Shown here: positions 691 through 60,530 of the stretch, in pieces
How positions within the stretch are numbered: position 1 is the first letter of the stretch
Layout: every line of letters starts with the position of its first letter
Source: Marsupella aquatica
Taxonomy: Eukaryota; Plantae; Marchantiophyta
Length of the DNA: 64,000 nt
NCBI GenBank assembly: GCA_973895155.1
Contig: OZ316899.1
Coordinates: 11,533,775-11,597,774, forward strand
Direction of reading: 5' to 3'
Notes under the pieces: model-generated
What the model was told of the DNA's origin: nothing
Database searches by the model: none
The model's input: only the letters and a program-made list of their open reading frames with translations
Made by a program: the position numbers and the translations under genes

Positions 691-704
691 TCTCTATAAA
701 TTAT

Positions 705-25711: not shown

Positions 25712-25756
25712 TACCTACGCTTCCGTTCTAACTTCATATCTCACGGCTTAAGAAAT

Positions 25757-25776
25757 GCCCCCTCCATCTAGTGCCA
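25757..25776 (-). promoter_or_regulatory. Primer-binding site of element A (probably tRNA-Asn)
   Basis: The minus strand reads TGGCACTAGATGGAGGGGGC four bases after the LTR end. It resembles the complement of the plant tRNA-Asn 3' end (TGGCGCTAGAAGGAGGGG, from memory). Confidence 0.75.
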
Positions 25777-29019: not shown

Positions 29020-29049
29020 ACCTTAGTATAGGACCAAAAACAAGGAAAA

Positions 29050-29055
29050 TATAAA
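29050..29055 (+). promoter_or_regulatory. Candidate TATA box near the start of the family A LTR
   Basis: TATAAA about 95 bp into the LTR, conserved in all three copies that retain this end. Confidence 0.45.
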
Positions 29056-29070
29056 CAATTAAGGGTGACT

Positions 29071-32670: not shown

Positions 32671-33586
32671 TGGTGTAAGGGCGCCGTCCCTTTTAGGGAG
32701 GGCGGACGTGGAGGTAGGAGGCGTGAGTGGGTAGGGCGGGCGCTGATCTCCAAGTTTAGACTTAGGATCAGGATTAGGAGACGGCCCTGACACTTAGATT
32801 AGTGGGATTTCGGATCCACGGGTGTGGACGACACTTGTGCTCCTGCTTCGCTGTAGTTAGGTAGATTATAGTTAGATAGATTACAGTAGGTAGATTAGGC
32901 TTACGCTGCAAGGAATCAGGCGGATCCACAACCAGGATAAGTACCTAGGCTGCGGGGAGTTCAGGGCCTCTTCTTTAACAAGTTTTTAGTTGCACCAGCA
33001 GGGCTGGGATCAAGTAGTAAGAGAAGCTCTCGGTTAGTTATACAGTGACCCTTGTATATATTCATGTTTCCTCATACTTAAGAACTGAATAGAGTTGGCC
33101 TCACGGCTTAGTTCGCAGAGCTTGTGTATGAGATGTACTGTTTGTATGGCAAGTGCATGGTATAACTCAGTCAGAAGGAGTCATTTTGCTATTTGTGTGT
33201 CGCATTAACTTGTGTGAAGAGTGCCCACATCAACTAATAGAGGAATAGAAGTAAGCAGGGGAGTGAGAGTTGGATGTGTCGAGCTGAGAGAGGTCTTAGC
33301 GGCTTAACCAAGCCAATTGGGGATCATTCCGGCGGCGGAATCCAAACATACCTAATGGAAGACCAGGAGAGGAATACAAGGGAGGGACTAGAATAGGCCG
33401 GCTAAGTATCTCATGACCCGATGAAGGATCTGTCCAGTATATGTGTGTAAAATGTTAATAGAGGATTAGCAGCGTCCCATGCCGCTAAACCGCGGAAACG
33501 ACCTCGCCAAGGACGAAACCTGCGGGAATCGGCTTGAGCAAGGGGGTTTCTTGGGTTTGGGGAGGCAGGGGACGCACCACAGCCAC

Positions 33587-39500: not shown

Positions 39501-39977
39501 CTAGTTATAAACTCAGAAGTGGACTCCCTCGTACAACAAAAAGTTTTTGGACCGACACCTGCAGGAACCCATCACACGGGTTATAGGTTCATCTTTGTCA
39601 AGAAACGCAATGTGAAAGGAGAAGTGATCAGACATAAAGCTTGCTTAGTAGCAAAGGGCTACACCCAGATTCCCGGCCGGGACTTTGATCAAACTTACTC
39701 TCCTATGATGGATTCAATCACATACAGAAATCTCATCGAATATGCTCTTTTGCACAAACTCATCATGCATATTTTAGACGTGATCACTACCTATCTGTAT
39801 GGTATACTTGATACCACAATATATATGAAGGCACCCCCGGAACTAATTAAGAGATTAATGTTCCACATTGAGGGGGAGAAAACCGATAACACAAACCCAG
39901 GCCTACAACCTGGAGTACTCCAAACTTGCCCTATAGGAGATTTGGATTCCCTGACGATTGAGCTTGGACCTTCTGTA
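36577..39977 (+). pseudogene. Copia gag-PR-INT-RT polyprotein, degenerate
   Basis: ORFs at 36895, 37531, 38687 and 39087 follow Copia domain order, with stops and frameshifts. Confidence 0.9.
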
Positions 39978-40849
39978 CACTAGAAGAATCTGAGGTGATT
40001 TGAGACCGCAATATGTGACTCATTTTGGCTCATGTGACTTCATTGTGACTCAACGTGACGTGACCCAGGCTGTGACCCTTGGAGTTGCAAAAGTTGAGAC
40101 CAAAAAATGGAAGTCACTATTGATACTGGGCATTGCGACTTGCTTGATACCCATTTGTGACTGATCTGTGACTTTATTGTGGAGTCTAGCCTTGTTGATA
40201 CGTGACTGCAATGTGACTTTAATTAGTCACAGGGTAAGTCATATACATGACTTACTTGCACTTAAAAACCACTATCTTGTGACCTTTTAGTGTCACGTAA
40301 TAGACCAATGGAGACCCTGATCCGGGTCACACAACAGAACCATTTGGGCCTCTATATAGTCATGTTCATAACTAATAAGGTTGACATGGAAGTTGTAACC
40401 ATGACTAATGAACACAGAGGGACAGTTCATAAGGAGAGAGAGCACTCCACATTGCAATACATAGAAACACTCATGTTCACACTTTAGAAGTATAACACAT
40501 TGAATACAAGAAATGAACTGAGCATGAATGACATCCACATGAAACAAAGCATCATATAAGCGGATCCTACATAAAACATTCATAAGAATTCAACAGAATC
40601 ACAATCTTGCTAGAAGATGATCATCATTTCAATTACAATGAAATAGTTTACAATGTCATCAATGTAATTCGGAGAAAATAGGAACTCATAAACTGATAAT
40701 TGTTTGAGATAATTGAAAGCACATGCATGATACTATGAATCTCCAAGAGGACATGATTCTTGTACTGCTTCTTGAGATCTAAAATCTATAGAACATGACT
40801 CACACTACAAACAAATAATGACATGACATTGTTATGGATCCTCGATAAA

Positions 40850-43880: not shown

Positions 43881-44311
43881 TAACTAACAAGATGCTGCAT
43901 CACATCACCAACTACAATGTCACAAACTAAGCAAGGTGCATATGTGTAGTACTTGTGACGCCGCCGGTACGGCGGTTAATGAGTGATTCAGTCTAACTGC
44001 GCTCGGCACGCGCGTTAGGTGGGTCTTAGGCCGCTATTATTAGCATAACGACAGTATTTAGGTAATCATTAGGGGTAGGACATCATTAGGCAATAAGGGG
44101 GACTTCAGGTTCGGGCTGGCGGCGGGTCGCTATTCGCACACCCGGGTTACGAGCGTGGAGGGGCCCCTCCCTCGGGTCCGTATAACGAACTTAAGGAAGC
44201 GGCCATTGACGCACGCTGACTCAGACCGGCGGAGTGGCCGGTACACCACAAGCGTGAGCGGTTCAACCTATGGGCGTCGAGGAGACGTCGGGGATCGACA
44301 AGCCCTCAAAG

Positions 44312-44318
44312 TATAAAA
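44312..44318 (+). promoter_or_regulatory. Candidate TATA box in the C LTR (mirror copy at 57448-57454 on the minus strand)
   Basis: TATAAAAGGGG about 100 bp upstream of the LTR ORF, followed by a CT-rich leader. Confidence 0.55.
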
Positions 44319-44419
44319 GGGGAGCCAACCCTTTGTAGTGCACCAGTCCATCAGTCCGCGCGCCAGCTTCGACCCCAGCTCTCTCGTTCTCTCTAGGTCG
44401 CCACTACTATCTCCTCTGA

Positions 44420-46798
44420 ATGTCGCACACGATCCTCTCCAGCTCGGCCATTCGATTCTGGACGCAGTTCCTATCTACCGGAAGGCACTTGGCCGATTCA
44501 TTGAAACACGCCAACCCGCGCCGATACGAGATCGAACGCGAATACAAGAGAGCCATCCGCCTAGCAGGACGACACCACTACGTCCTTAACTTTGACTACC
44601 CGTCTCAGAGCGAGCTTTACCGACCAGCTGAGGTATCTGGGTACTTCTTCAACGGAGACAAATATATCGGGTTCTGGGAAGCATTGCTTCGGCTTCCGGA
44701 CGAGGTCTTCAATATCCCGGGTACAATCGACCTGCAGCGACATCACTTCGACCACATCCCTGCCCAGGTTCGGGCTGTCATTAACGGCGAGTCCAGTACC
44801 AACCGTTCGACAAGGGCGTCCGCACTCGCTTCGGAGAACTTCTACCAGCACCTGCAGAGCTTCATGGGAACTCGGCCATCAACCAACATGACCAACTCAG
44901 CCGGGCCCGTACCCGTACCCGTGCCCATGCAACCTCAGCTTCAGCCTCAACCTCAGCTTCAGCCTCAGCCGCAGCCTAGCCAAACCCCACCACCTATCAC
45001 CCAGCCAGCACAGGTACGCTCTGTCATCAACGCTGTGGATCTTAGCGATGACGACGAGGCTACCCCACCCTTGACCAGGCGGCCCAGAGGAACAAACGCT
45101 CGGGGGGCCGACACTATATCGTCCCCACCCCCTGCTCTGACCCCAGGAGCGGCCCCAGCAGACAACATAGTGACCGTGGCCGCCCCGGGCCCGTTACCAA
45201 CCACAGTGGCACTCCCCAGGCCCGATCGGGAGGATGGGGAAGTATCACCTTCCCCGAGTCAGTCACGGGGAAAGAAGAGGAAGGAATCCATCACTGCATC
45301 TGGGGTACCGTTGGCCACGGTAGCCGTAGCCAAGGTGACGATGCATCACATGGGGGAAAACGTTCACAGCAACATCCTCCATCCCAAGCATGCGGTGTAC
45401 CTGAAGACTCAGGGATTTGAGCACCTCGCCTCTCTCCCCTGGAACACTTGCAGGTACTACGGGGAGGACATGACAGAATTCGTCAAGAATTATGACGACG
45501 TACGTCAACAGACTCGGCTGCGGGGAAGGAATATGTCCCTCACAGAAGAATGGCTCAAGATGATCTTCGGGTTACCCGAAGGTGACCATCGAGTCGAATC
45601 ATGGGCTCCCGGGGGCAAGGGGGCCAAGTACCAATCTTCAAGTTTTCCCTCAGAGGGATCAGTAGACAACGGGTTCGTGATGAGGACCTGCCTCATGCCC
45701 GAGATAGCTGAGCGGCTGGAGTTCCAGAGGTACGCTCTCCACATGATGGAACCCCGGGGGGAGATCTCCGCCGCCCAGGTTATCCAGGTCGAGAACTATC
45801 GACCTAGGAAATGGGCGTCGTACTTCGCTAAGAAATTCCATGAAGAGATGGAGCGGCGAAGGAAGACGCTGTACATTGGCGGGAAGGCGTATTTCGCTAG
45901 CCACATCGAAATCATTCTTGAGTGGTACGCCCGGTTTGATCGACGAATCCTTCCTCGCATCAACGTTACAAAGCTGGTCCCAGCTAGGTGGGTTTTTCTG
46001 GCATTGGAGAGACGGCCCCAACCCGAGGCCCGAAGTCCAGTGGACACGCCAGCTTCACCCACCCCACCTCCACAAATAGCTGTAATCGTAACCGAGGAGG
46101 CGCCGGAGGGGTCGGTCGTCGCAACCGTTGATGCGACCCAACTAGCCGGGCCAAGTACAGAAGTTGGTACGGCAGAGGTCTTACCCGAACCCGGGTCTCC
46201 CAAGGACCCGCCGGTGGCAATTCCGGAGAACCGGACATCGCTGCAGGAGGACACTCCAGCCCCTTCCAACGTTATGTCCCCAGGGCTGGACGTCACTGCC
46301 CCGGCCCCTGCGCGTGTTGATGTCTGCCCGTGCCCAAATCCGGACAGGCACAACTTGGACCACCCGGAACTCTTCGTACAGGGTACGTTTCTGAACGGGC
46401 TTCTGGGAGATTTCTCTCATCAAATTGCCCGAGATACCGGGGAGTTCATGGCCCGGAAGGTAGCCTGTTTCTTCAATCAGGAGTTGGTTGCCGCCGTAAA
46501 GGCAGGTCGGGCCCAGTCGGAGGCCCTTCAGAGGATAGAGCGGTACCGGGTGGAGTCCGTGTACCTAAAGAACGAAGTGGCGGCTCAAGAGGCTGAGCTT
46601 CTGCAACTACGACCCAAGGTTGCAGCCGCCGATGAGTTGTTAGCAAAGGCGTACGCTCTTACCGCCCTAGCCGAACAGGCCAAAGCTGGGAACGAGGCCG
46701 AGATTACACGACTCCGGAACCAGATTGACAGTTTGAAGAAACAAGCTGTCACCTGGCAGAAAGACCTGGAGGAGGCCGAGGAGCGTGCCAGGCATTAG
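44420..46798 (+). CDS. LTR-encoded 792-aa protein of family C (90-aa in-frame deletion in the coiled coil)
   Basis: Open ORF inside the left arm; homologous to the family A LTR ORF. Confidence 0.8.
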   Translation: MSHTILSSSAIRFWTQFLSTGRHLADSLKHANPRRYEIEREYKRAIRLAGRHHYVLNFDYPSQSELYRPAEVSGYFFNGDKYIGFWEALLRLPDEVFNIPGTIDLQRHHFDHIPAQVRAVINGESSTNRSTRASALASENFYQHLQSFMGTRPSTNMTNSAGPVPVPVPMQPQLQPQPQLQPQPQPSQTPPPITQPAQVRSVINAVDLSDDDEATPPLTRRPRGTNARGADTISSPPPALTPGAAPADNIVTVAAPGPLPTTVALPRPDREDGEVSPSPSQSRGKKRKESITASGVPLATVAVAKVTMHHMGENVHSNILHPKHAVYLKTQGFEHLASLPWNTCRYYGEDMTEFVKNYDDVRQQTRLRGRNMSLTEEWLKMIFGLPEGDHRVESWAPGGKGAKYQSSSFPSEGSVDNGFVMRTCLMPEIAERLEFQRYALHMMEPRGEISAAQVIQVENYRPRKWASYFAKKFHEEMERRRKTLYIGGKAYFASHIEIILEWYARFDRRILPRINVTKLVPARWVFLALERRPQPEARSPVDTPASPTPPPQIAVIVTEEAPEGSVVATVDATQLAGPSTEVGTAEVLPEPGSPKDPPVAIPENRTSLQEDTPAPSNVMSPGLDVTAPAPARVDVCPCPNPDRHNLDHPELFVQGTFLNGLLGDFSHQIARDTGEFMARKVACFFNQELVAAVKAGRAQSEALQRIERYRVESVYLKNEVAAQEAELLQLRPKVAAADELLAKAYALTALAEQAKAGNEAEITRLRNQIDSLKKQAVTWQKDLEEAEERARH

Positions 46799-47708
46799 CG
46801 GCGGAGTAGGAATAGATTAGGATTAGGATTGGCTTAGTCAGGCTCTTGGGACAGGCACCTGCCTTAGGTACAGCAGCGCTGCCCTGCTGTCCAGCCTGCG
46901 TAAATTAGGATCTTCTAATAAGACACAGCCATTTTCCGGCCTGACTGTCAGCTTAGTTAGGACCTTAGTCAGCGAATCTTCGGCGAGAGGACACCCCGTT
47001 CCTCGGCTCTTAGTATTTAGTGCACCCCTTGGTAGAGGCAGGGGGGGCTTTTTAGTTTCAGAGTCGGACATCCGCGGGACATGCGGGGAGTCCCGACCTC
47101 TGGGAATGACAGAGTACCAAGGGGAGGGGGTAGGACTAAGCTCGCCGGGCGAGTGCGGAGCCGGGCTCCGTTGTAGTGTGCACCCTCGGCCTTGAACCTG
47201 TGCATTCCAGGGCTGTCGTGTCAACTAAGTGTACGCATATGTTCCCTTTGTAGTAAAATCCTTTCCCATCATTTTCCTTCGTGTAAATCGAGATTGTATG
47301 CATGTGTGCGCATATGTGTGTGGGTTTCTCGTATATGGGTGGCAGCGCCAGGCCGAACACACTACCCGAGACGTGCACAGGGTGCAGCCTGCGGGTAAGT
47401 GGTTGCGAGCACGGGTTGAGGACCTGTATCATCGAATCCGGATCGAAGGCGGACAGCACGAAGGCTTAGAAGCCCTTAAGCCGGGGTCGATCCTACTATC
47501 GACTAAGGTACGTTCCGGCGGCGGAACACAAACCATACCTAGGAGGTGTTCGTATTTAGCAGTATGCGCACTTAGCGCTAGTTTACGAGAATAAGGTGCA
47601 TTACGTGCTTCCCTTCCTGCCCGAACCCTCAGATTTACGAGGGATGTGCCCATCTAAGCTGAAGTCTGAGTTAAGGCCGAAGCCTACGACGTGACATAGC
47701 CTTTGTTT

Positions 47709-47726
47709 TGGCGCTAGATGGAGGGG
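47709..47726 (+). promoter_or_regulatory. Primer-binding site of element C (probably tRNA-Asn)
   Basis: TGGCGCTAGATGGAGGGG, nearly identical to the PBS of element A. Confidence 0.8.
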
Positions 47727-47819
47727 GCACTCTACATATCGTAGAGGGGAGACATGTGCGTATTCACCTAGGCAGGATACATCAGGACGTAGTACTAACC
47801 ATTGCATTTATATGAGTAA

Positions 47820-50800
47820 ATGCCCGTCACTCGTTCTCAAGCAGCTTATTTGAGGAGATTGACCAGCGAACGAGAAAGTGCAACCACAACAAGCTCCGAC
47901 TCGTCGGGCTCGGAGGACTCGCAATCGTCCCGACGTATGAACATACCCCCGGGATCTTCGGGGTCCGGTTCGACCGGCCCTGCTGCGGTTCCACCACCAC
48001 CACCACCACCACCACCTATGGCAGCCGCTCCACCGGTGGCCCGCGCTGCTCAGGCGCCTCCACAAATATTGCAACGATCGCGATTTCATTATCGACCTTT
48101 CAAAGGGCGTCATGGGGATGATCCGGATGAATGGTTGGATGAGTTTGAAGCCACTGCTAAAGCTAATGGGGAAGACGCCATTAAGCTAACCGTCCTCCCG
48201 GGAGTGATGCGGGGAGAAGCTCGTCCATGGTACAACTCGTTACCACCCGGGACTACCTGGGCACAATTCCAAGCTGCATTGCTGCAGGAGTTTCGTGTCA
48301 TTGGATCAGAACAACGTTCTCTATTAAAGATTGGCCAGCTTTGCATGGGAAAAAAAGAGTCCCTGCGGAAGTTCATTCAGAAGTTTCAGAAACTTGCGGC
48401 CAAGATCTGGCCCAGGCCAGGAGATGCGCTCCATCTTACATGGTTCCTTCATGGTTTGCCCACGAATATGCAATTCTGGGTACGCCAGAATAATCCAATT
48501 TCAATGCAGGCGGCCATAGCGTGCGCCGAAACTTACCGGGAGTCCACCTATAACTCCTGGCGGAGCCAGCGAGCACGCCGCAGGAAGGGTAAGTACGAAA
48601 CCTTCAGTGACAGTGACTCCGAATCGGACAATGAGAGGAAGAAGAAACGCAAGAAGAAGAAGAAACATCGTTCGACCTCGTCCAGCTCCGAGACGGAATC
48701 CAGTTCGGATTCAGCTTCAAGCATCGGATCCTCTACCTCCAGTTCATCAGGAAGTGACTTGGAGAGCGAAAGCCGGAGCAAAAAGAAGAAGAGACGAGTG
48801 AAGAAGGAGGGGAAGATTAAACCCCGGGCGCGAAGAACGATACCAGATCCAAAGGCTGCCAAAGCAGACAAGCTGAACGAAATCACGGATCGACTCAAAG
48901 CACTGTCAGTACATCTTGCAGAAAAGCCGGTGGAGAAGAAGAAGCCATCTGAGATTCGAGCCCATGCGTGGTGTTCAAAGTGCTTCCAATCCGGCCATGT
49001 GGTGCAGGAATGCCCAAGGTGGAAGAACCGAGTTCACCAAGTAGAGCTGGATGATGTTGACAACCCGGGCCCCGAATCGGAGTCCACGGAGTATTTCTTT
49101 GAGGACCCTCCTGATTCCGTGTACCAGATTTCAACGGTAGGACCGCGTAATTTAGCGGGTAGAACTGCGTACCCCTACCCAAGTAATGGCCGGAGTTTCC
49201 AGGTTATCAGTAACCCGAGCATCCCTCCTAAGCCAGGGATTTGGCGGTCCCCGGTTTGTTACAACTGTGAAAAGCCAGGACACTTTGCGAGGGAATGCAC
49301 CGAACCAAGACGTCAGGGAGATGGCCGAGGCACCCCACTATGTCAAGTTTGCAAAACGGAGGCTCATTCCACGTCCAACTGTCCGTTGGTAATCGTTGCT
49401 CGAACGAGTGCGGCTAGACCGGCCCAGGCTGGACCAGTCACGAGCGATGCAGTCGTCCAAATGATTGCTGTAGAATGGCAAGATGACAACACCGAGTGGG
49501 TGAATCTGGTGGACGTGGCGGAACACCCTAATCCATTGGATGAGGCCGAGTGCTACCGAGTGTCGACAAGGGCCGAACGGAAGGAAGAAAAGATGGAGGA
49601 GAAACGGAGGAAAAAGCAAGATACTACTCCGGTGCAGCCAGCGATAAATATACCCCCGGAAAAGGACGATGACTACCGACGGGATGACCCGAAGCTGTTT
49701 TTCCCCCGCATCGAAGAATTGGTAAAGAAACAGCTGGAGGCTTACGAAGCTCGGGAATACCAGAAGGCAATCGATAAGGACATCAAAGCAGCCGAGACAG
49801 CCCGGCGTCAGGAGCAAGAAAAGCAAGATAAACAAGAGGAAGCCAAGCAGCAGCCAATGAAAGAAACAAAGGAGGACTATGATATTAAGGAGGACGTGAA
49901 GAGTTGCCCGGTTACAGCGACGGTGGGGCAACTGCTGCAGAACAACCCACAGTACAGACGACAACTGAGGGAGTTGCTCATGGGTCGCCGAAGGAGGAGA
50001 CTACCCCGAGTTGGGAGTGCGGACTGCAACATGATATGCGAGGACCTTGGAGCGCCGGACATCTCGATCGAAATTAATAACTGTACCATCAAGATGGTTC
50101 TTGTAGACGGAGGAGCGGGAGTCAACATCATGACTGAAGAAACGTCAGTCAAGTTAGGATACCTCACGTATCAACCCACGGCCCGAGCTATCAGATTAGC
50201 AAACGGGGCAAGGGTCCTCCCATTAGGCACGTTCACACGAGTGCTCACTCTGGTGGGAGGGGTAGAGTTCTATCTCAACTTCTTAGTCATGAGGCCGGTT
50301 CGTCCCTCCTCTTATCCGGTTCTTCTGGGCAGGCCGTGGTTGTACGGTGGCCGCGTAGTCACGGATTGGGGAAAGAAGGAGCTACGGTTCGGGGAACCCA
50401 CCGTACGGGTATCCTGGGCAATGGACGATTATCAGGGAGAAACCCCACAAGGACCCAAGGAATATGATTCGGAGACCTCGGAGGAAGAGGAACTCAATAT
50501 GATCGAACTCATCTCGTCCCTATCCGAGGAAGATGTCTTCGGAGTTGAAGCAACCCGAGAAATACATCTCCTAAATTACCCGAGGGCTGCCATTGAGTCC
50601 ACCCCAAGTACATCTACTGTCGGGGATGAGGAAACGCATGAACAACTCGTCGAGACGGAGGACACGGCTCCAGCTAAGCAGGGAGCCGAGGCTACTCCTT
50701 CCATTTCAGAGCCTCGTAACCATGAACCAGCCCAACAACCGCCTGAGGCCGAAAACTCGAGACCGAGACATAAAAAGCGAGTCTCATGGGATCCGTCCAT

Positions 50801-53800
50801 TCCGCAATTGGAGGAAGTAAACCCCATCCCGAGACCAATCCCGGTCCCACCCATGTACGGAGGGGTTCGGTTAGCTGAGCTTGACGCGAGCTTGGACCCG
50901 AGTCTGCAAAACCAGGTTGAAGTCATCAGGAAGGAGCACTACCGGAAGTACACTATTGGGATGGACAAATCTTTTAACCTGGGCCACGCTCTGACGGGGA
51001 AGGCTGAAAAATCCATCCAAGCTTTGCTCAAGGAATATGAAGATGTGTTTGCATGGAGTCATCATGATTTAACAGGCGTCTCCCCCGAGTTGGGAGAACA
51101 CACAATCGATCTGAACCTAGGAGCCCATGCGGTACGACAGCGACAACGTCGCATGAATCCGAGGTACTCCATCTTAGTAAAGGAGGAAATTGATCATCTC
51201 CTCGCCGCCGATATCATTTACCCGGTAATGGCCAGCGACTGGGTCTCTCCCATTGTCATTGTACCAAAGAAGGGAGGTACGGATGGAAAACCTAAGATTC
51301 GTATCTGTCAGGACTACCGTAAGCTGAATGACGCAACCCGAAAAGACCATTACCCATTACCATTCACGGATATGGTTCTAGATATGGTGGCCCGAAATGA
51401 AATCTATACATTTCTTGACGGGTATTCAGGTTATAACCAAATCTGGATTCGTCTCGCGGATCAGCTCAAAACAACTTTCACTACGGAGTGGGGAACGTTC
51501 GCATTTCGGAGGATGCCTTTTGGTCTGTGTAACGCCCCGGCTATGTTTCAGCGCCTTATGATGAATATCTTCCACGATTTCCTACGGGAATTTTTGGAGA
51601 TATTTATCGATGACTTTGCCATCTTCGGAACCGTTGCCATGCACCCCGAACACCTACGACAAACGTTGCAACGATGCCGAGATGTTAACCTCAAACTACA
51701 TCCCGCCAAATGCTTCTTCGGGGTAGAGGAGGGGGTGTTACTCGGGCATCGTGTGTCCAAACGGGGCATTGAGGTGGACCAAGGGAAAGTTGCGGCCTGG
51801 ATGGCGGTGGTGTTCCCCTTGGATCAAAAAGCAGTACGATCCTTCTTGGGCTGCGTAGGGTATTACCGCCGGTTCATTAAAGACTTTGCTAAAATTGCGT
51901 TGCCCTTAACTGAGATGATGAAGAAGGACGCAGCGGTCGAGGAGACACCCCGAAGACGGATTGCTTTTGAGGAACTCCGTAAACGACTCACCACCGCGCC
52001 TATCATGGTCACCCCAGACTGGAATAAGGAGTTCCACGTGTATGTCGATGTGTCAGGGTTCTGTATCGGATCCGTACTTAGTCAGCTAGATGAGGATGGA
52101 TGATCACCCCATCTATTTCGCTAGCCGTCAACTATTTGCAGCCGAAAAGAATTATTCCCCCACTGATCGAGAAGCTTTGGGAATAATCTACTCGTGTAAA
52201 AAGTTCCGACACTATCTGCTAGGCTACAAGGTCATTTTCCACACGGATCATGATAGCCTGAAGTACATGGTCAACAAAGCGGATGTGATAGGACGGATAG
52301 CCCGGTGGGTGCTACTTCTCCAGGAATTTAATTACGAAGTTTGGGTTCGGCCAGGAAGGGTACACCTCAATGCCGATTTCTTTTCACGACTGGACGGCGT
52401 ACCAGTCGATCAGCCAATTGATGATATTTTTCCGGATGAGGAGTTGTTCCACGTGGGGGAAGGGACACCAATGTGGTACGGCTCAATAATCACCTTCCTT
52501 TTAACGGGCCGCATCCCTGACGGCATCAATCAGGAGGCCGCCGCTGTGTTTTTACGGAAAGCCGGGCCTTACGTCATGATACAGGGTCACCTACATAAGG
52601 AAGGTATTAACGGAAAGTTACGACGCTGCTTAGAGTATAAGGAGACACTTATCGTGATACGGGCCCTGCATGAAGAAGAAGCTGGAGGCCATTTCGCGGC
52701 AGTTACGACAGCCCGAAAGATTCTGGACTCGGGGTATTGGTGGCCTACGTTGCATCGGGATGTACAGCGCTTCATTAAGGGCTGTGACTTGTGTCAGCGA
52801 GCGGGGGCCCCGAGGCGGGCTCATCATCACCCGCTCACATCTGTGCTTCCATTGGCACCATTCGAAAAATGGGGAATTGATTATATCGGACCGTTCACTC
52901 CCGTTACCCGAAGGCGAAGGTGCAGGTACATCCTATTAGCTATTGATTACTCCACCAAATGGGTCGAAGCGCGGGCTACGGTAAAGGACGACGCCGCAAC
53001 CAGTGCCAGATTCTTATACGAACAGATTTTCACCCGATTCGGACCGCCCTTAGAATTGGTAAGCGACCGTGGAACCCACTTCCTCAATGACACCGTAGCC
53101 CAGCTTACGGAGCGTTACCTAGTCAAGCACCGCAAGACTACCCCATATCATCCTAAAGCCAACGGGATGGCGGAGAGAGCAAATGGTATAATTGGGAAGA
53201 TCCTCAACAAAACTGTAGCTGCGCACAAAACGGATTGGGATGATAAGTTGTACGCGGCGGTGTACTCGTATAATCTAGCTTACAAAACTACTACGAGTCA
53301 CAGCCCGTACTTTCTGGTGTTCGGCCAACATTCGTTGGTGCCCGTCGAATTTGAAGTGCACACTCCACGGGTCAGCATTCGGGATCGCTTACCTGAATCT
53401 GAAAGTCTGTCAGACCGAGCTTATCAGATTGAAGCCTTGGAAGAAGCACGGCTACTGGCAGCTCGACACACCGTGAAGAAACAGGCAACTTCGAAGAAGC
53501 AGCACGACAAAGGACTACGGAGGGTCGACATCGTGGCAGGCGATCTAGTCCTTCTGTACGATAGTAGGTACATGCAGTTTCCAGGGAAGCTGCATACCCG
53601 GTGGTTGGGGCCCTTCCTTGTCAATCAGATCTACCGAAACGGATCTTTGGAGCTTGCGACGTATGCCGGCGATTTACTCCCCACGCGAATCAGCTACGAT
53701 CGTGTAAAAAAGTACCACCATCAAGATGACGACGTCGATAGCGATGTTTGCGAGGACGCTTCACAATTAAGCAGGGAGCTATGTGACAAAGGCTATGTCA

Positions 53801-53808
53801 CGTCGTAG
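47820..53808 (+). pseudogene. Gag-Pol polyprotein of element C (three CCHC knuckles, PR, RT, RH, INT) with one frameshift near 52095
   Basis: ORF 47820-52103 has VDGGAGVN and FIDDF; ORF 52090-53808 has GIDYIGP, SDRGTHF and WLGPF. The break falls where element A reads LDEKGRDHPIYF, consistent with a 2-bp loss. Confidence 0.93.
53765..53781 (+). promoter_or_regulatory. Polypurine tract of element C
   Basis: AATTAAGCAGGGAGCTA before TGTGAC; matches the PPT of element A. Confidence 0.85.
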
Positions 53809-56800
53809 GCTTCGGCCTTAACTCAGACTTCAGCTTAGACGGGCACATCCCTCCTAAATCTGAGGGTTCGGGCAGGAAGGGAAGCACGTAATGCACCTTA
53901 TTCTCGTAAACTAGCGCTAAGTGCGCATACTGCTAAATACGAACACCTCCTAGGTATGGTTTGTGTTCCGCCGCCGGAACGTACCTTAGTCGATAGCAGG
54001 ATCGACCCCGGCTTAAGGGCTTCTAAGCCTTCGTGCTGTCCGCCTTCGATCCGGATTCGATGATACAGGTCCTCAACCCATGCTCGCAACCACTTACCCG
54101 CAGGCTGCACCCTGTGCACGTCTCGGGTAGTGTGTTCGGCCTGGCGCTGCCACCCATATACGAGAAACCCACACACATATGCGCACACATGCATACAATC
54201 TCGATTTACACGAAGGAAAATGGTGGGAAAGGATTTTACTACAAAGGGAACATATGCGTACACTTAGTTGACACGGCAGCCCTGGAATGCACAGGTTCAA
54301 GGCCGAGGGTGCACACTACAACGGAGCCTGGCTCCGCACTCGCCCGGCGAGCTTAGTCCTACCCCCTCCCCTTGGTACTCTGTCATTCCCAGAGGTCGGG
54401 ACTCCCCGCATGTCCCGTGGATGTCCGACTCTGAAACTAAAAACCCCCCTGCCTCTACCGAGGGGTGCACTAAATACTAAGAGCCGAGGAACGGGGTGTC
54501 CTCTCGCCGAAGATTCGCTGACTAAGGTCCTAACTAAGCTGACAGTCAGGCCGGAAAACGGCTGTGTCTTATTAGAAGATCCTAATTTACGCAGGCTAGA
54601 CAGCAGGACAGCGCTGCTGTACCTAAGGCAGGTGCTTGTCCCAAGAGCCTGACTAAGCCAATCCTAATCCTAATCTATTCCTACTCCGCCGCTAATGCCT
54701 GGCACGCTTGCCAGAGCCGCCCGAATGGGAACGGCCATCCCGCTGCCTTCGAAGCCTGTCATTGTCCGCCTTGAGGAGCTGGACCTGGTCCAGCAGAGAT
54801 TCGTTCTCTCGCCTTGCCGCGTCCGTCTCCTCTACTGCCTCCTGACATGCCTCCTCCAGCTGCTGGGCGTCGCTCGTCAGTTTACTCGCCAGCTGGTCCT
54901 GCTTCTCGGCCTCGGTTTGGAGCCGTGCCATCTCGGCCTGCAGCGTGGCTATCTCCGTCGCGTCCCGCTGGGCTCGCTCCTCGGCCTCCTCCAGGTCTTT
55001 CTGCCAGGTGACAGCTTGTTTCTTCAAACTGTCAATCTGGTTCCGGAGTCGTGTAATCTCGGCCTCGTTCCCAGCTTTGGCCTGTTCGGCTAGGGCGGTA
55101 AGAGCGTACGCCTTTGCTAACAACTCATCGGCGGCTGCAACCTTGGGTCGTAGTTGCAGAAGCTCAGCCTCTTGAGCCGCCACTTCGTTCTTTAGGTACA
55201 CGGACTCCACCCGGTACCGCTCTATCCTCTGAAGGGCCTCCGACTGGGCCCGACCTGCCTTTACGGCGGCAACCAACTCCTGATTGAAGAAACAGGCTAC
55301 CTTCCGGGCCATGAACTCCCCGGTATCTTGGGCAATTTGATGAGAGAAATCTCCCAGAAGCCCGTTCAGAAACGTACCCTGTACGAAGAGTTCCGGGTGG
55401 TCCAAGTTGTGCCTGTCCGGATTTGGGCACGGGCAGACATCAACACGCGCAGGGGCCGGGGCAGTGACGTCCAGCCCTGGGGACATAACGTTGGAAGGGG
55501 CTGGAGTGTCCTCCTGCAGCGATGTCCGGTTCTCCGGAATTGCCACCGGCGGGTCCTTGGGAGACCCGGGTTCGGGTAAGACCTCTGCCGTACCAACTTC
55601 TGTACTTAGCCCGGCTAGTTGGGTCGCATCAACGGTTGCGACGACCGACCCCTCCGGCGCCTCCTCGGTTACGATTACAACTATTTGTGGAGGTGGGGTG
55701 GGTGAAGCTGGCGTGTCCACTGGACTTCGGGCCTCGGGTTGGGGCCGTCTCTCCAATGCCGGAAAAACCCACCTAGCTGGGACCAGCTTTGTAACGTTGA
55801 TGCGGGGAAGGGTTCGTCGATCAAACCGGGCGTACCACTCAAGAATGATTTCGATGTGGCTAGCGAAATACGCCTTCCCGCCAATGTACAACGTCTTCCT
55901 TCGCCGCTCCATCTCTTCATGGAATTTCTTAGCGAAGTACGACGCCCATTTCCTAGGTCGATAGTTCTCGACCTGGATAACCTGGGCGGCGGAGATCTCC
56001 CCCCGGGGTTCCATCATGTGGAGAGCGTACCTCTGGAACTCCAGCCGCTCAGCTATCTCGGGCATGAGGCAGGTCCTCATCACGAACCCATTGTCTACTG
56101 ATCCCTCTGAGGGAAAACTTGAAGATTGGTACTTGGCCCCCTTGCCCCCGGGAGCCCGTGATTCGACTCGATGGTCACCTTCGGGTAACCCGAAGATCAT
56201 CTTGAGCCGTCCTTGTGTGAGGGACATATTCCTTCCCCGCAGCCGAGTCTGTTGACGTACGTCGTCATAATTCTTGACGAATTCTGTCATGTCCTCCCCG
56301 TAGTACCTGCAAGTGTTCCAGGGGAGAGAGGCGAGGTGCTCAAATCCCTGAGTCTTCAGGTACACCACATGCTTGGGATGGAGGATGTTGCTGTGAACGT
56401 TTTCCCCCATGCGATGCATCGTCACCTTGGCTACGGCTACCGTGGCCAACGGTAACCCAGATGCAGTGGCGGATTCCTTCCTCTTCTTTCCCCGTGACTG
56501 ACTCGGGGAAGGTGATACTTCCCCATCCTCCCGATCGGGCCTGGGGAGTGCCACTGCGGTTGGTAACGGGCCCGGGGCGGCCACGATCACTATGTTGTCT
56601 GCTGGGGCCGCTCCTGGGGTCAGAGCAGGGGGTGGGGATGATATAGTGTCGGCCCTCCGAGCGCTTGTTCCTCTGGGCCGCCTGGTCAAGGGTGGGGTAG
56701 CCTCGTCGTCATCGCTAAGATCCACAGCGTTGATGACGGAGCGTACCTGTGCTGGCTGGGTGATAGGTGGTGGGGTTTGGCTAGGCTGCGGCTGAGGCTG

Positions 56801-57812
56801 AAGCTGAAGCTGAGGTTGAGGCTGAAGCTGAGGTTGCATGGGCACGGGTACGGGTACGGGCCCGGCTGAGTTGGTCATGTTGGTTGATGGCCGAGTTCCC
56901 ATGAAGCTCTGCAAGTGCTGGTAGAAGTTCTCCGAAGCGAGTGCGGACGCCCTTGTCGAATGGTTGGTACTGGACTCGCCGTTAATGACAGCCCGAACCT
57001 GGGCAGGGATGTGGTCGAAGTGATGTCGCTGCAGGTCGATTGTACCCGGGATATTGAAGACCTCGTCCGGAAGCCGAAGCAATGCTTCCCAGAACCCGAT
57101 ATATTTGTCTCCGTTGAAGAAGTACCCAGATACCTCAGCTGGTCGGTAAAGCTCGCTCTGAGACGGGTAGTCAAAGTTAAGGACGTAGTGGTGTCGTCCT
57201 GCTAGGCGGATGGCTCTCTCGTATTCGCGTTCGATCTCGTATCGGCGCGGGTTGGCGTGTTTCAATGAATCGGCCAAGTGCCTTCCGGTAGATAGGAACT
57301 GCGTCCAGAATCGAATGGCCGAGCTGGAGAGGATCGTGTGCGACATTCAGAGGAGATAGTAGTGGCGACCTAGAGAGAACGAGAGAGCTGGGGTCGAAGC
57401 TGGCGCGCGGACTGATGGACTGGTGCACTACAAAGGGTTGGCTCCCCTTTTATACTTTGAGGGCTTGTCGATCCCCGACATCTCCTCGACGCCCATAGGT
57501 TGAACCGCTCACGCTTGTGGTGTACCGGCCACTCCGCCGGTCTGAGTCAGCGTGCGTCAGTGGCCGCTTCCTTAAGTTCGTTATACGGACCCGAGGGAGG
57601 GGCCCCTCCACGCTCGTAACCCGGGTGTGCGAATAGCGACCTGCCGCCAGCCCGAACCTGAAGTCCCCCTTATTGCCTAATGATGTCCTACCCCTAATGA
57701 TTACCTAAATACTGTCGTTATGCTAATAATAGCGGCCTAAGACCCACCTAACGCGCGTGCCGAGCGCAGTTAGACTGAATCACTCATTAACCGCCGTACC
57801 GGCGGCGTCACA
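53782..57812 (-). repeat. Right arm (inverted LTR, 4031 bp) of element C
   Basis: A complete LTR TGTGACGCC...CTTTGTCACA on the minus strand, starting exactly at the PPT. Confidence 0.93.
54692..57346 (-). CDS. LTR-encoded 884-aa protein of family C (full length)
   Basis: Open ORF mirroring 44420-46798, with the whole coiled coil present. Confidence 0.82.
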   Translation of the reverse strand: MSHTILSSSAIRFWTQFLSTGRHLADSLKHANPRRYEIEREYERAIRLAGRHHYVLNFDYPSQSELYRPAEVSGYFFNGDKYIGFWEALLRLPDEVFNIPGTIDLQRHHFDHIPAQVRAVINGESSTNHSTRASALASENFYQHLQSFMGTRPSTNMTNSAGPVPVPVPMQPQLQPQPQLQLQPQPQPSQTPPPITQPAQVRSVINAVDLSDDDEATPPLTRRPRGTSARRADTISSPPPALTPGAAPADNIVIVAAPGPLPTAVALPRPDREDGEVSPSPSQSRGKKRKESATASGLPLATVAVAKVTMHRMGENVHSNILHPKHVVYLKTQGFEHLASLPWNTCRYYGEDMTEFVKNYDDVRQQTRLRGRNMSLTQGRLKMIFGLPEGDHRVESRAPGGKGAKYQSSSFPSEGSVDNGFVMRTCLMPEIAERLEFQRYALHMMEPRGEISAAQVIQVENYRPRKWASYFAKKFHEEMERRRKTLYIGGKAYFASHIEIILEWYARFDRRTLPRINVTKLVPARWVFPALERRPQPEARSPVDTPASPTPPPQIVVIVTEEAPEGSVVATVDATQLAGLSTEVGTAEVLPEPGSPKDPPVAIPENRTSLQEDTPAPSNVMSPGLDVTAPAPARVDVCPCPNPDRHNLDHPELFVQGTFLNGLLGDFSHQIAQDTGEFMARKVACFFNQELVAAVKAGRAQSEALQRIERYRVESVYLKNEVAAQEAELLQLRPKVAAADELLAKAYALTALAEQAKAGNEAEITRLRNQIDSLKKQAVTWQKDLEEAEERAQRDATEIATLQAEMARLQTEAEKQDQLASKLTSDAQQLEEACQEAVEETDAARRENESLLDQVQLLKADNDRLRRQRDGRSHSGGSGKRARH

Positions 57813-58499
57813 GTACTTAACATATCAAACCTCTAAACAATAGTTTTTAACTCAAAACCTTGTCGGGAAAACTACTTACCTGTTTCTTTTGGGGCTGCTT
57901 TGCAATGTATTCATCGTCATAACCCCCATCCTCATCCATTTCCTCTAGAAAATACTCATCATCTGCATCTTCTTGTCTAGTGTCTGTACCCACCTGTGCA
58001 GCATCCATGTCATCTCCACATTCTGCCATTGTAGGTACGACCTTCTTGCTCAACCTTTCACTCCAACGCACAGGCCCAGAGATAGTGCTGGTCACCCTTC
58101 TTGCGTACTCCTTTTGTTTCTTTGAAAGTTTTGTGGCTCTACGACATTCCAATATGAGAATACAGTCACAATTTTAGTGCCACATTGAACTATTCATGTC
58201 ACACAAACTCAGCGGAGGGGTGTGGTTGAGAATCGTTCCCTTACAATTCAGCCACATCCTTTTTCAGTTCCAGTTATGCAATTTTGGCTTTCACGTATGC
58301 TCGTTGTTCCATAGCTTTCCTTTCATACTCACACATCTCTGTGTCACTCTGTTCCACCCTACTGGACCACAAAAACATGTCATCTATGGTCACCCCGTAT
58401 AACACAATGCAACCACAATCACTAGGCATCCATCCATACATTTGTGTTGCTTCAGAATTACTTTATTACACATCCTTCCCCTCACTAATGTCCATGCAA

Positions 58500-58835
58500 A
58501 CAATTCACATTACTCATGGCACAGGCACACTGTTGGCACTCTGAATTTGCCTCCTTTAGCAAATGCATCTACCCTTGTCACAGGAATGAAGTCCCCGCTA
58601 TCATGAACTATAGGCACTTGGTCTGAACGCCGATGATCAAAGGCACTATGAGAGTGTAAATGAAACTCAAGGTTTGATCCTTCCATCCGACGTTGCCTGG
58701 CTTGTTTATGACACACTACACACCAATTTGGGGAGTCTTCCACATCCAGGAAGAAAGCTTGCTCCACCTGACTGGAAAACACAAATGGCTCAGACCATTC
58801 GGGGAATTTCCCTCTGAAAGTGGCCAGCAAGAAAT
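58500..58835 (-). pseudogene. C-terminus of the CACTA2 Tnp2 transposase
   Basis: FLLATFRGKFPEWSEPFVFSSQVEQAFF matches CACTA1 FLLANFRSRVPEWSEPFVFPSQVEQAFF. Confidence 0.85.
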
Positions 58836-60530
58836 TGTGGTGCGTCCCATGGCTCCCTAAACCCAAGAAACCCCCCTGCACAAGCCGATTCCCGCAGGTT
58901 TTGCTCTCGACGAGGCCGGTTTTGCGGCTTAGCGGCATGGGACGCTGCTAACTCTCTTCCACTAACATTTTACACACATATACTGGACAGATCCTTCATC
59001 GGGTCATGAGATACTAGCCGGCCTATTCTATGCCTTCCCTTGTCTTCCTCTCCTTATCTTTAGGTATGTTTGGATTCTGCCGCCGGAATGATCCCCAACT
59101 GGCTTGGGTAAGCCGCCAAGACCTCTCTCAGCTTGACACATCCAACTCTTACTACCTTGCTTACTCCCTTCTCTTGGTTGATGTGGGCAATCTTCAAACA
59201 AGTTAATGCGACACAAATAGCAAAATGACTCCTTCTGACTGAATTATACCATGCACTTGCCATACAAACAGTACTTCTCATACACAAGGTCTGCGAACTA
59301 AGCCGTGAGGCCAACTCTATTCAGCTCTTAGGCATGAGGAAACATGAATATACACAAGGGTCACTTTATAACTAACCGAGAGCTTCTTTTACTACTTGAT
59401 CCCAGCCCTACTGGTGCACTAAAAACTTGCTAAAGAAGAAGGCCCTGAACTCCCTGTTGCCCAGGTACTTATCCTGGCAGTGGATCCGCCTAATTCCTTG
59501 CAGCATAAGCCTAATCTATCCTAACTATAATCTACCTATGTACAGCAAGGCAGGAGCTCAAGTGTTGCTCTTACCAGTGGATCCGCAATCCCACTAATCT
59601 AAATGTTAGGGCCGCCTCTTGGTCCTTATCCTAATTCTAAACTTGGAGATCTGAGCCCGCCTTGCCCACTCATGCCTCCTCCCTCCACGTCTGCCCTCCT
59701 TAAAAGGAGTGGCCCTCCACCACCATCATGGTAGCGGTGGCTGATCCTCAATGGACGCCCCCAATGCTTCCTCCGCAACCACTGCCGTGGGTCCGTCCTC
59801 TGACAGATTACCTACCCCAGACCCAATCAACTCACCCGCGGCCTGACCGGGTCCACCCTCGGCTTCGGCCTCAGCATCGGCCACGGCCTCTAATACGGCT
59901 ACGGCCTCCCTGACATGCTCTAGTGGTGGATCCAGTACCCCGGCTTCATCACTGAGTGTCTTGTCCTCGGCTTTGCCATCCCCACCTTCTAGGGCAGTTG
60001 GATCCTCTGCCGTGACCTTGCCTGCGGTTGGTGCCGGGTTTACCTCCTTGGTCACGACGGCTTGAGAAGCCGCATTACTCCCTGATCTAGAAGGTTTCCG
60101 CTTCTTCTTCTTCCCTGGTTCGGCAGCTGGTCCCTTCCCCTTGCCACTTAATTCCGACACTAGTGCGAGTGTTGCGGCTTGTCCCTCGGCCAGTACTACT
60201 CCTGGCAACTTGGGTGCCCCAATTGGAGTTGGACTTGATGAAGCCAAGCACTTAAATACTACGGCTTGTTTCTTTAGCCGCTCCGTTTGGTTGTCGGCTC
60301 GCCGCTGTAAGTTCTTCATCTTCCTTGTGCTTTCCTCCAACTCCTCTTGCACTTCATCCAGGTCCTTACACGCCTCCTCCAGCTCCTTTTGGGCTTCCTC
60401 CAACTCTTTTTGGGCTTCCTCCAACTCCTTCTTTAAGGTAGCCCTCTCCTCCTGGGTTGCTCTTAGCTCCTTGTCAAGCTCCATTACAACCTCAAACTCC
60501 ATTTTATTCATCTTGGCATAAGTCTGAGCT
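58836..60530 (-). mobile_element. Fragment (3' 1.7 kb) of another long-form family A LTR (A''), including the end of the LTR ORF (59726-60526)
   Basis: Starts TGTGGTGCGTCCC; colinear with 31890-33581; encodes QTYAKMNKME...ASIEDQPP. Confidence 0.9.

What the first reader, a model, noticed from the sequence alone, without database searches (positions are those of the whole stretch)
43954..57812. Integrase-type Gypsy retrotransposon with inverted ~4-kb LTRs and a clean shared TSD
Seen: the arms 43954-47706 and 53782-57812 are reverse complements. The PBS follows the left arm, the PPT directly precedes the right arm, both outer ends are the same U3 terminus (TGTGACGCC), and one 5-bp TSD (GTACT) flanks the whole unit. 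The 278-bp length difference between the arms is fully accounted for by indels (270+6+4-2). Established: Gypsy reverse transcription needs direct repeats for strand transfer, and inverted terminal repeats are typical of DIRS elements, which use a tyrosine recombinase and make no such TSD. Inference, three options: (a) a replicating class with inverted LTRs and fold-back replication; (b) a one-off template switch at the 6-bp terminal repeat TGTGAC/GTCACA that made a molecule with two U3 ends which integrase still inserted; (c) a post-insertion flip of the 3' LTR between those termini.
Basis: partly seen in the sequence, partly recalled or inferred. Interest (0 to 1): 0.92.

Follow-up and report, generated by a model that had tools for sequence, protein, structure and literature searches.

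The report
Gypsy retrotransposon with one flipped LTR
This is one copy of a liverwort-type Gypsy retrotransposon whose right-hand 4-kb terminal repeat sits backwards. It is most likely a one-off copying accident during reverse transcription that the integrase still inserted, not a new class of mobile element.

Summary
Arms 43954-47706 and 53786-57812 are reverse complements (about 1.1% mismatch; indels of 6, 270 and 2 bp). A 5-bp duplication, GTACT, flanks the unit, and both outer ends are the same U3 terminus. The interior encodes gag-PR-RT-RNaseH-integrase, with one frameshift.

This accessory gene lies inside the LTR throughout this lineage.

A sister family in the same window, and relatives in the liverwort Calypogeia fissa, share the same primer sites and the same LTR-borne gene. 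All of them have direct LTRs, so inversion is not the lineage's architecture.

Comparison suggests the true LTR ends at GTGACA (47696). If so, the flipped arm also contains 10 nt of the leader between LTR and primer site, which an integrated 3' LTR lacks. The first U3 bases also occur at both the inner junction and the outer end. That points to copying, not cut-and-flip.

Best reading (about 0.6): a snap-back template switch during reverse transcription made a cDNA with two U3 ends, and integrase inserted it. No other copy of this family could be found, so a census in the source genome is still needed.

The parts
43949..43953 (.). Left copy of the 5-bp target-site duplication, GTACT
   Evidence: Read directly. 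It is identical to 57813-57817.
43954..47696 (+). Left arm, the 5' LTR in normal orientation. It starts TGTGACGCC; its probable natural end is GTGACA.
   Evidence: Inverted repeat. The end at 47696 is inferred from three things: the ACA|TAG pattern shared with L003 and the Calypogeia elements; a 10/14 terminal inverted match to the U3 start; and the fact that no extra deletion is then needed.
44420..46798 (+). ORF3, left-arm copy (792 aa), with in-frame 6-bp and 270-bp deletions relative to the right-arm copy
47697..47708 (+). Leader (spacer) between the LTR end and the PBS. Its first 10 nt (47697-47706) are also present, reverse-complemented, in the right arm.
47709..47729 (+). Primer-binding site. 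It matches family A at 20 of 21 positions, and its first 20 nt recur in Calypogeia relatives.
47820..52103 (+). gag (capsid, CCHC), protease, RT and the start of RNase H (1427-aa ORF)
   Evidence: Pfam matches.
52090..53808 (+). Rest of RNase H, then integrase (H2C2 zinc domain plus rve core). It is in another frame, so pol is broken by one frameshift inside RNase H.
   Evidence: Pfam. Relatives read through this point in one frame.
53762..53781 (+). Conserved polypurine block ending in GGGAGCTA. Together with the five bases that follow, it matches family A at 24 of 25 positions.
53782..53785 (+). Junction bases TGTG. They equal the first bases of U3 as made from the PPT and have no partner in the left arm.
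53786..53795 (-). Reverse complement of the first 10 nt of the LTR-PBS leader, carried at the inner end of the right arm
53796..57812 (-). Right arm, an LTR in inverted orientation. Its outer end is the U3 terminus.
54692..57346 (-). ORF3, right-arm copy (884 aa, full length), antisense to gag-pol
57813..57817 (.). Right copy of the target-site duplication, GTACT

Best explanation
This is a single, now dead copy of a liverwort-type, non-chromodomain Ty3/Gypsy retrotransposon. In its lineage the LTRs are 3-4.7 kb long because the plus-strand primer site sits directly after integrase, which places an ~880-aa accessory gene (ORF3) inside U3.

In this copy the right LTR was built backwards before integration. 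During reverse transcription a plus-sense DNA strand copied another plus-sense LTR strand (a snap-back or strand switch). One breakpoint lies 4-6 nt after the polypurine primer site. The other lies 2-4 nt from the junction between the PBS/tRNA primer and the DNA. These are two natural ends of strong-stop intermediates.

The product was a cDNA with a complete U3 terminus at each end. Both ends look the same to integrase, so it was inserted normally and made a 5-bp duplication. The copy then decayed neutrally.

Shown: the anatomy, the junction sequences, the TSD, and the canonical architecture of relatives. Inferred: the position of the natural U5 end, the timing before integration, and the exact order of strand transfers.
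For: (1) Two identical U3 termini abut a perfect 5-bp TSD. The canonical sister element in the same window also makes a 5-bp TSD (ACCTT).

(2) Both inner breakpoints lie at reverse-transcription landmarks. These are fixed by the PBS and PPT blocks conserved with family A and with Calypogeia elements.

(3) In three independent Calypogeia copies the integrated 3' LTR stops at ..GTTAACA, while the 5' LTR runs on for 38-50 nt (starting TAG or TAA) to the PBS. Element C and its closest relative L003 show the same ACA|TAG pattern. GTGACA at 47696 also gives a 10/14 terminal inverted match to the U3 start; only 3 of about 3750 positions in the arm reach 10. On this reading the right arm contains 10 nt of leader that an integrated 3' LTR would not have. 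TGTG(AC) of U3 also occurs both at the inner junction and, complete, at the outer end. That needs copying, not cutting and re-joining.

(4) The lineage shows another integrated product of aberrant strand transfer. The 3' LTR of L031 carries U5, leader and exactly 18 nt of PBS, then restarts in U5 at a GGGG microhomology.

(5) The arms differ by 1.1%, with 6 synonymous and 20 non-synonymous changes in ORF3. This fits two copies that were identical at insertion and then drifted, as for family A's LTR pair at 99.2%.
Against: No canonical copy or solo LTR of family C was available. The natural U5 end is therefore inferred by analogy, and a rival candidate end exists at 47528 (12/14 match). If the LTR really ends ..TTTGTCACA, with the left arm having lost 4-6 nt, then a simple flip between 6-bp terminal inverted repeats also fits.

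The proposed pathway needs more than one unusual strand transfer to give a fully double-stranded product. None of this is observed directly.

The flanks are themselves a near-palindrome (11/13), which slightly weakens the TSD as independent evidence.

Read-level support for the assembly could not be checked.
Confidence: 0.6

Rival explanations
1. Post-insertion rearrangement of an originally normal element. Either the 3' LTR was flipped between its own short terminal inverted repeats, or a host replication or repair template switch (MMBIR-like) replaced the 3' LTR with an inverted copy of the 5' LTR.
For: If the LTR ends ..GTCACA, the 6-bp termini TGTGAC/GTCACA would allow a flip that keeps the PPT, both junctions and the TSD exactly as seen. 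Rare LTR inversions have been reported in endogenous retroviruses: HERV-K124 (PMC3625200) and a guppy foamy-like ERV (PMC5210030). A two-switch copying event using AC and ACA microhomologies would also reproduce both junctions (inference).
Against: Both breakpoints must fall exactly on LTR boundaries. About 24,000 pairs of 6-bp inverted repeats are expected by chance in 14 kb, so this is unlikely without a process that recognises LTR ends.

A simple flip also needs an unrelated 4-6 nt deletion at the very end of the left LTR. It cannot explain leader bases in the right arm if the LTR ends at 47696.

A copy that ran on into the left flank would give CACAAGTACT, not the observed CACAGTACT.
Confidence: 0.17
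2. Assembly artefact: the 3' LTR is direct in the real genome and was placed backwards.
For: Repeats of 4 kb are hard to assemble, and no reads were available to check. The element was not found in any public collection searched.
Against: The arms are distinct sequences (42 mismatches, an in-frame 270-bp indel), not one sequence used twice. There are no N gaps.

An orientation error would also flip some adjacent unique sequence. Here the PPT side and the TSD side are both in correct orientation right up to the LTR boundary, and the inner junction carries a specific 4-nt join plus leader bases. Palindromic chimeric reads would give a zero-spacer palindrome, not 6 kb of unique interior.
Confidence: 0.05
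3. A heritable architecture: family C, or a sub-lineage, replicates with inverted LTRs by a fold-back mechanism and integrates with a DDE integrase.
For: Both termini are integrase-competent U3 ends with a clean TSD. Both ORF3 copies and most of gag-pol are still open. No census of family C was possible, so this is not formally excluded.
Against: All comparable elements have direct LTRs: family A in the window and Calypogeia L031, L032 and L035, which share the PBS, PPT and LTR-borne ORF3. The RNA would lack a 3' R for first-strand transfer, and ORF3 in the right arm is antisense. There is no internal complementary region and no tyrosine recombinase. pol carries a frameshift. The junction looks like an irregular 2-nt microhomology join rather than a designed boundary.
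Confidence: 0.04
4. Two independent events: an inverted solo LTR or second copy happened to lie next to a 3'-truncated element, or two copies recombined.
For: The window is a dense nest of retrotransposons with several LTRs in both orientations.
Against: The same 5-bp TSD brackets the whole unit, and both outer ends are U3 termini. Recombination between inverted repeats flips what lies between them, not the repeats themselves. The arms are 98.9% identical, whereas unrelated LTR copies in the window are about 85% identical.
Confidence: 0.02

Closest known systems
Canonical elements of the same liverwort Gypsy lineage: family A in this window (5072-29019, minus strand) and Calypogeia fissa elements (L031, L035)
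   Same: Same gene order. The PBS is nearly identical (TGGCRCTAGATGGAGGGGGC). The PPT block is the same and ends in GGGAGCTA, followed by TGTGA. LTRs are 3-4.7 kb and contain a homologous ~880-aa ORF3. The TSD is 5 bp where checkable.
   Different: Their two LTRs are direct. In element C the 3' LTR is reverse-complemented, carries 10 nt of leader at its inner end, and presents a U3 rather than a U5 terminus to the flank.
DIRS retrotransposons (DIRS-1, PMC7192593, PMC3950715)
   Same: Retroelements whose terminal repeats are inverted.
   Different: DIRS elements use a tyrosine recombinase, have an internal complementary region and make no TSD. Here there is an rve integrase, no complementary region and a 5-bp TSD.
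Sporadic LTR inversions in endogenous retroviruses (HERV-K124, PMC3625200; guppy foamy-like ERV, PMC5210030)
   Same: Single proviral copies with an inverted LTR, regarded by those authors as rare accidents and linked to template switching.
   Different: In HERV-K124 the inverted LTRs are partial and the locus is complex. Here the inverted LTR is complete, the boundaries are base-exact, and one TSD brackets two U3 ends.
Athila/Tat-type plant Gypsy elements with a sense accessory ORF after pol (PMC7264820, PMC11728184)
   Same: No chromodomain, and a large sense ORF downstream of integrase. A distant ORF3 relative (P0247) weakly matches Pfam PF20167, a family that PMC11728184 relates to Athila ORF1.
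   Different: In described plant elements the extra ORF lies between pol and the 3' LTR. Here it lies inside the LTR and is therefore present twice per element. Membership of the Athila clade was not tested by phylogeny.
MMTV sag and HIV nef (my own knowledge, not checked here)
   Same: Accessory coding sequence placed in U3 of the LTR.
   Different: Those are short ORFs of animal retroviruses. ORF3 fills most of a 3-4 kb plant LTR and is unrelated in sequence.

Membership tests
Ty3/Gypsy LTR retrotransposon | pol domain order protease, RT, RNase H, integrase, with gag upstream | tested here: met
   Pfam hits: Retrotrans_gag, zf-CCHC, aspartyl protease, RVT_1, RT_RNaseH, Integrase_H2C2 and rve, in that order on the + strand.
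Ty3/Gypsy LTR retrotransposon | PBS next to the 5' LTR and polypurine tract next to the 3' LTR | tested here: met
   Both blocks are conserved with family A and the Calypogeia elements. Which tRNA is used was not identified.
Ty3/Gypsy LTR retrotransposon | Two LTRs in direct orientation | tested here: not met
   The arms are reverse complements. By genes and primer sites it is a Gypsy element, but an aberrant one by architecture.
Ty3/Gypsy LTR retrotransposon | Short target-site duplication made by a DDE integrase | tested here: met
   GTACT on both sides. Family A has ACCTT.
DIRS | Tyrosine recombinase in place of a DDE integrase | tested here: not met
   rve and H2C2 integrase are present, with no recombinase domain.
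DIRS | Internal complementary region that matches the repeat ends | tested here: not met
   Arm and interior share only two 13-mers, against 0.7 expected by chance.
DIRS | No target-site duplication | tested here: not met
   A 5-bp TSD is present.
Integrase-bearing DNA transposons with terminal inverted repeats (Ginger, Maverick/Polinton) | No reverse transcriptase; a cut-and-paste or self-synthesising element | tested here: not met
   RT, RNase H, gag, PBS and PPT are all present.
Athila/Tat (non-chromovirus) clade of plant Gypsy elements | No chromodomain at the integrase C-terminus | tested here: met
   No chromo domain hit in the 572-aa RNase H-integrase ORF.
Athila/Tat (non-chromovirus) clade of plant Gypsy elements | Placement within the clade by RT/integrase phylogeny, and an accessory ORF homologous to ATHILA ORF1/Transposase_32 | tested here: inconclusive
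   No tree was built. ORF3 itself has no Pfam hit. The only link is a distant relative, P0247, with a sub-threshold PF20167 match.

The most novel reading that the evidence does not exclude
Family C, or a branch of it, is a DDE-integrase Gypsy lineage that propagates with inverted LTRs. It would use the two identical U3 termini for integration and a fold-back (panhandle) intermediate in place of the usual R-mediated strand transfer. That would be an architecture so far known only from tyrosine-recombinase DIRS elements.
Probability: 0.03. Interest if true: 0.9.

Novelty: new variant of a known kind. Interest (0 to 1): 0.4.

Why it matters
If the best reading is right, this copy is a natural record of two things usually seen only in vitro. 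One is reverse transcriptase making a snap-back product at strong-stop landmarks. The other is a retroelement integrase performing concerted integration of a DNA with two U3 ends.

The copy may also have a consequence for the host. Its two LTR promoters face each other, and a read-through transcript would fold into a stem of up to 3.7 kb. That could trigger small-RNA silencing of the family. This is an inference by analogy with the maize Mu killer locus (my own knowledge) and was not tested.

The by-product may be more useful than the flagged anomaly. A liverwort Gypsy lineage carries a conserved ~880-aa gene, under purifying selection, inside its LTRs. The gene's core fold gives a weak structural match to the VANC21 anti-silencing protein. 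The review of plant accessory ORFs that was read describes such ORFs only in the internal region.

Tried and rejected
1. Other copies of family C were sought in five ways.
- Window self-comparison found none.
- Word-indexed protein searches were run with ORF3 (blank), with gag-pol (best 52%) and with the integrase C-terminus as a separate 272-aa piece (best 75% over part).
- An exact 17-mer from U5 was scanned against the metagenome collection. It gave 26 matches, and none is homologous to the element by blastn.
- An exact look-up of the 884-aa ORF3 found nothing on record.
- No census was therefore possible, and the source genome was not identified.

2. A DIRS reading was rejected.

3. A DNA transposon with long inverted repeats and an rve integrase was rejected because RT, PBS and PPT are present.

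4. I first suspected that LTR copy B (29020-33581) and the LTR fragment at 58835-60526 formed a second inverted-LTR element hosting this one. This was rejected: they are only about 85% identical, and neither is followed by a PBS.

5. Autointegration was considered and rejected. Its inversion product is a circle whose ends are consumed, so it cannot give two free U3 ends with a host TSD (reasoning from established retroviral biology).

6. The idea that the inverted similarity extends into the flanks, so that the 'TSD' is only part of a longer palindrome, was rejected. The 13 flank bases differ at two positions plus one indel, against 1.1% divergence in the arms.

7. Pfam on whole ORF3 and on its parts gave nothing, even with the E-value limit raised to 10. 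A profile search of PDB sequences also gave nothing.

8. dN/dS beyond codon 480 of ORF3 was dropped, because the ungapped alignment breaks down there.


Full report
**What is in the sequence**

The flagged interval is a 13,859-bp unit. Two arms, 43954-47706 and 53786-57812, are reverse complements. Aligned, they show 42 mismatches within the arms (about 1.1%), almost all transitions. They also show indels of 6 bp, 270 bp (present only in the right arm) and 2 bp.

The outer ends read TGTGACGCC on the left and its reverse complement on the right. GTACT lies immediately outside both ends, at 43949-43953 and 57813-57817.

The 6-kb interior encodes, on the + strand, gag with a CCHC knuckle, an aspartic protease, RT and RNase H, then an H2C2/rve integrase. 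It has no chromodomain and no tyrosine recombinase. RNase H is split between two frames at 52090-52103. Relatives read through that point in one frame, so this copy has a broken pol.

Each arm carries a long ORF: 44420-46798 (+), 792 aa, and 54692-57346 (-), 884 aa. The 6-bp and 270-bp indels are in frame, so both copies remain open.

This ORF3 has no Pfam match and no word-indexed relatives. It is nevertheless homologous to an 883-aa ORF at 5545-8196 (-) in the same window (28% identity over 185 aa, E = 8e-19).

That second ORF lies inside the LTR of another Gypsy element, here called family A. Family A is on the minus strand. Its LTRs are direct (5072-8311 and 25781-29019, 99.2% identical). 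It has a clean 5-bp TSD (ACCTT) and a nested CACTA transposon.

A third, ~85% identical LTR copy (29020-33581) allows a selection test. For codons 281-480 dN/dS is 0.12, and for codons 1-280 it is 0.38. ORF3 is therefore a real gene under purifying selection, not a chance open frame.

**Fixing the canonical architecture**

Families A and C share the primer-binding site at 20 of 21 positions (25756-25776 on the minus strand and 47709-47729). They also share the block that ends the integrase ORF and the polypurine tract and continues into the LTR start, at 24 of 25 positions.

A search with the integrase C-terminus as a separate piece found its best named relatives in the liverworts Calypogeia fissa and Marchantia. 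The window is therefore very probably from a liverwort, although the species was not identified.

Six Calypogeia loci were fetched. They carry the same PBS, the same polypurine block followed by TGTGAGG, and ORF3 homologues inside long LTRs. Where both LTRs survive they are direct:
- L031: 4.7 kb, 96.3% identical.
- L032: 3.8 kb.
- L035: 294-4742 and 10946-15353.

The closest pol relative overall, a metagenome contig (L001, 52% over gag-pol), is assembled as a direct tandem. The normal plan of this lineage is therefore: direct LTR with ORF3, then PBS, gag-pol and PPT, then direct LTR with ORF3. Element C departs from this plan only in the orientation of its right LTR.

**The junctions**

A canonical family C element should read ..GGGAGCTA|TGTGACGCC.. 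at the 3' junction. The observed sequence is ..GGGAGCTA|TGTG|ACAAAGGCTA|TGTCACG... At the left arm the sequence is ..CGTGACA|TAGCCTTTGT|TT|TGGCGC...

There are two ways to read this.
- H2: the LTR ends at GTGACA (47696). The 12 nt up to the PBS are a leader. The TGTG at the junction is the start of U3 as primed from the polypurine tract.

Four lines of evidence favour H2.
- It needs no coincidental deletion.
- In three independent Calypogeia copies the integrated 3' LTR stops at ..GTTAACA next to unrelated flank. The 5' LTR continues for 38-50 nt, beginning TAG or TAA, before the PBS.
- Element C and its closest relative L003 show the same ACA|TAG pattern upstream of a T-run and the PBS.
- The end at 47696 gives a 10/14 inverted match to the U3 start, and only 3 of about 3750 positions in the arm score 10 or more.

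One of those other positions, 47528, scores 12/14, so the exact end is not settled. Any end upstream of 47706 leads to the same conclusion. I put H2 or a variant of it at about 0.7.

**What this implies**

Under H2 the right arm contains the reverse complement of leader bases that an integrated 3' LTR does not have. The first 4-6 bases of U3 are also present twice: once at the inner junction and once, complete, at the outer end. Cutting out a 3' LTR and re-inserting it backwards cannot produce that. A polymerase must have copied a plus-sense LTR-plus-leader strand onto the end of another plus-sense strand.

The two breakpoints lie 4-6 nt after the polypurine primer site and 2-4 nt from the DNA/tRNA junction. 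These are the natural ends of plus-strand strong-stop DNA, and the overlap is only the dinucleotide AC. Two routes give the observed join:
- a plus strand running through the PPT switches onto a strong-stop plus strand (possibly its own 5' part, a snap-back);
- or a nearly complete strong-stop plus strand switches onto a plus-sense template at the start of U3.

Completing both strands needs further steps that I cannot reconstruct.

The result has a full U3 terminus at each end. To integrase these ends are equivalent, and the 5-bp TSD is what the lineage normally makes.

The same lineage shows another integrated accident of strand transfer. The 3' LTR of L031 runs through the leader and exactly 18 nt of PBS, then restarts in U5 at a GGGG microhomology.

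After insertion the two arms drifted. They show 6 synonymous and 20 non-synonymous differences in ORF3, which is the neutral expectation. The 270-bp deletion is bounded by an 8-nt repeat.

**Rivals**

- Post-insertion rearrangement remains possible (about 0.17), mainly through H1. It requires both breakpoints to fall exactly on LTR boundaries. A copying event that ran into the left flank would give one extra A at the right junction, which is not seen.
- Mis-assembly is unlikely (about 0.05). The arms are distinct sequences, the unique sequence on both sides is correctly oriented right up to the boundaries, and the inner junction is a specific join.
- A replicating class with inverted LTRs is not supported (about 0.04). 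Every comparable element is direct. The interior has no DIRS-like complementary region (two shared 13-mers against 0.7 expected). The RNA would lack a 3' R. This copy's pol is broken.
- That last rival is not formally excluded, because no second family C copy could be found anywhere.

The literature held here treats LTR inversion in integrase-type elements as a rare accident: HERV-K124 (PMC3625200) and a guppy foamy-like ERV (PMC5210030). It treats inverted repeats as a class feature only for DIRS.

**ORF3**

A profile of the central domain found 122 representative proteins at E <= 0.001. All those that carry names come from liverworts (Calypogeia, Riccia).

The domain folds with high confidence (pLDDT 90.9, pTM 0.88). 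Its only notable match among solved structures is VANC21, the DNA-binding anti-silencing protein of the Arabidopsis VANDAL21 transposon (9lnj_A: E = 0.045, probability 0.94, TM 0.52). There is no sequence-level match to any solved structure. This is a lead, not an assignment.

One distant relative has a sub-threshold match to Pfam PF20167. PMC11728184 links that family to Athila ORF1.

The review of accessory ORFs in plant LTR retrotransposons (PMC7264820) places such ORFs in the internal region. An accessory gene lying wholly inside the LTR therefore seems not to have been described there.

**Verdict**

The most likely story is a one-off product of aberrant reverse transcription, integrated through two U3 ends. 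It is a curiosity with some mechanistic value rather than a new class.

Noticed in passing
window 5072-29019 (minus strand); LTRs 5072-8311 and 25781-29019; ORF3 5545-8196: This is a canonical sister element (family A). It has direct 3.2-kb LTRs (99.2% identical), TSD ACCTT, a PBS at 25756-25776 and an intact 883-aa ORF3 inside the 3' LTR. The 5' LTR copy of ORF3 has one stop. The element hosts a CACTA transposon (Transposase_21 ORF at 16355-18250).
   Followed up: yes
window 44420-46798, 54692-57346, 5545-8196, 29071-31662; L031, L032, L035: An ~880-aa accessory gene lies wholly inside the LTRs of this liverwort Gypsy lineage, because the polypurine primer site sits directly after integrase. 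Its central domain is under purifying selection (dN/dS 0.12). The domain folds confidently, and its best structural match, a weak one, is the VANC21 anti-silencing protein.
   Followed up: partly
L004 5041-5088 and 15762; L031 4616-4662 and about 15606; L035 4742-4780 and about 15353: In Calypogeia relatives the integrated 3' LTR ends at ..GTTAACA, but the 5' LTR is separated from the PBS by 38-50 nt. The linear cDNA should therefore carry a long tail beyond the terminal CA, which must be removed at integration. This is an unusually long LTR-PBS spacer.
   Followed up: partly
L031 15380-15610: The 3' LTR runs through the leader and exactly 18 nt of the PBS. It then restarts about 135 nt back in U5 at a GGGG microhomology and ends normally. 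This looks like an integrated product of a misplaced plus-strand transfer.
   Followed up: partly
window 43940-43953 and 57813-57825: The host flanks of the element are a near-palindrome (11 of 13 positions, centred on AGTACT). Before insertion the target would have been an imperfect palindrome of about 22 bp. It could be chance, an integrase target preference, or part of another repeat.
   Followed up: partly
window 29020-33581 (+) and 58835-60526 (-): These are two further LTR copies of the family A type, about 85-90% identical to family A. Neither is followed by a PBS. The first abuts the right TSD copy of family A head to head and carries an ORF3 copy with four stops.
   Followed up: partly
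L001 (metagenome scaffold, 18.7 kb held): The closest full-length pol relative (52%) is assembled as a direct tandem with a 9,490-bp period. Two small ORFs lie between pol copies, one with a Zn_ribbon_Elf1 hit, instead of ORF3. It has the same polypurine block but not the same PBS.
   Followed up: no
window 704-1547, 37531-39983: Ty1/copia fragments (RVT_2, gag_pre-integrase, Pol_BBD hits) are present. The whole window appears to be nested transposons with no evident host gene.
   Followed up: no
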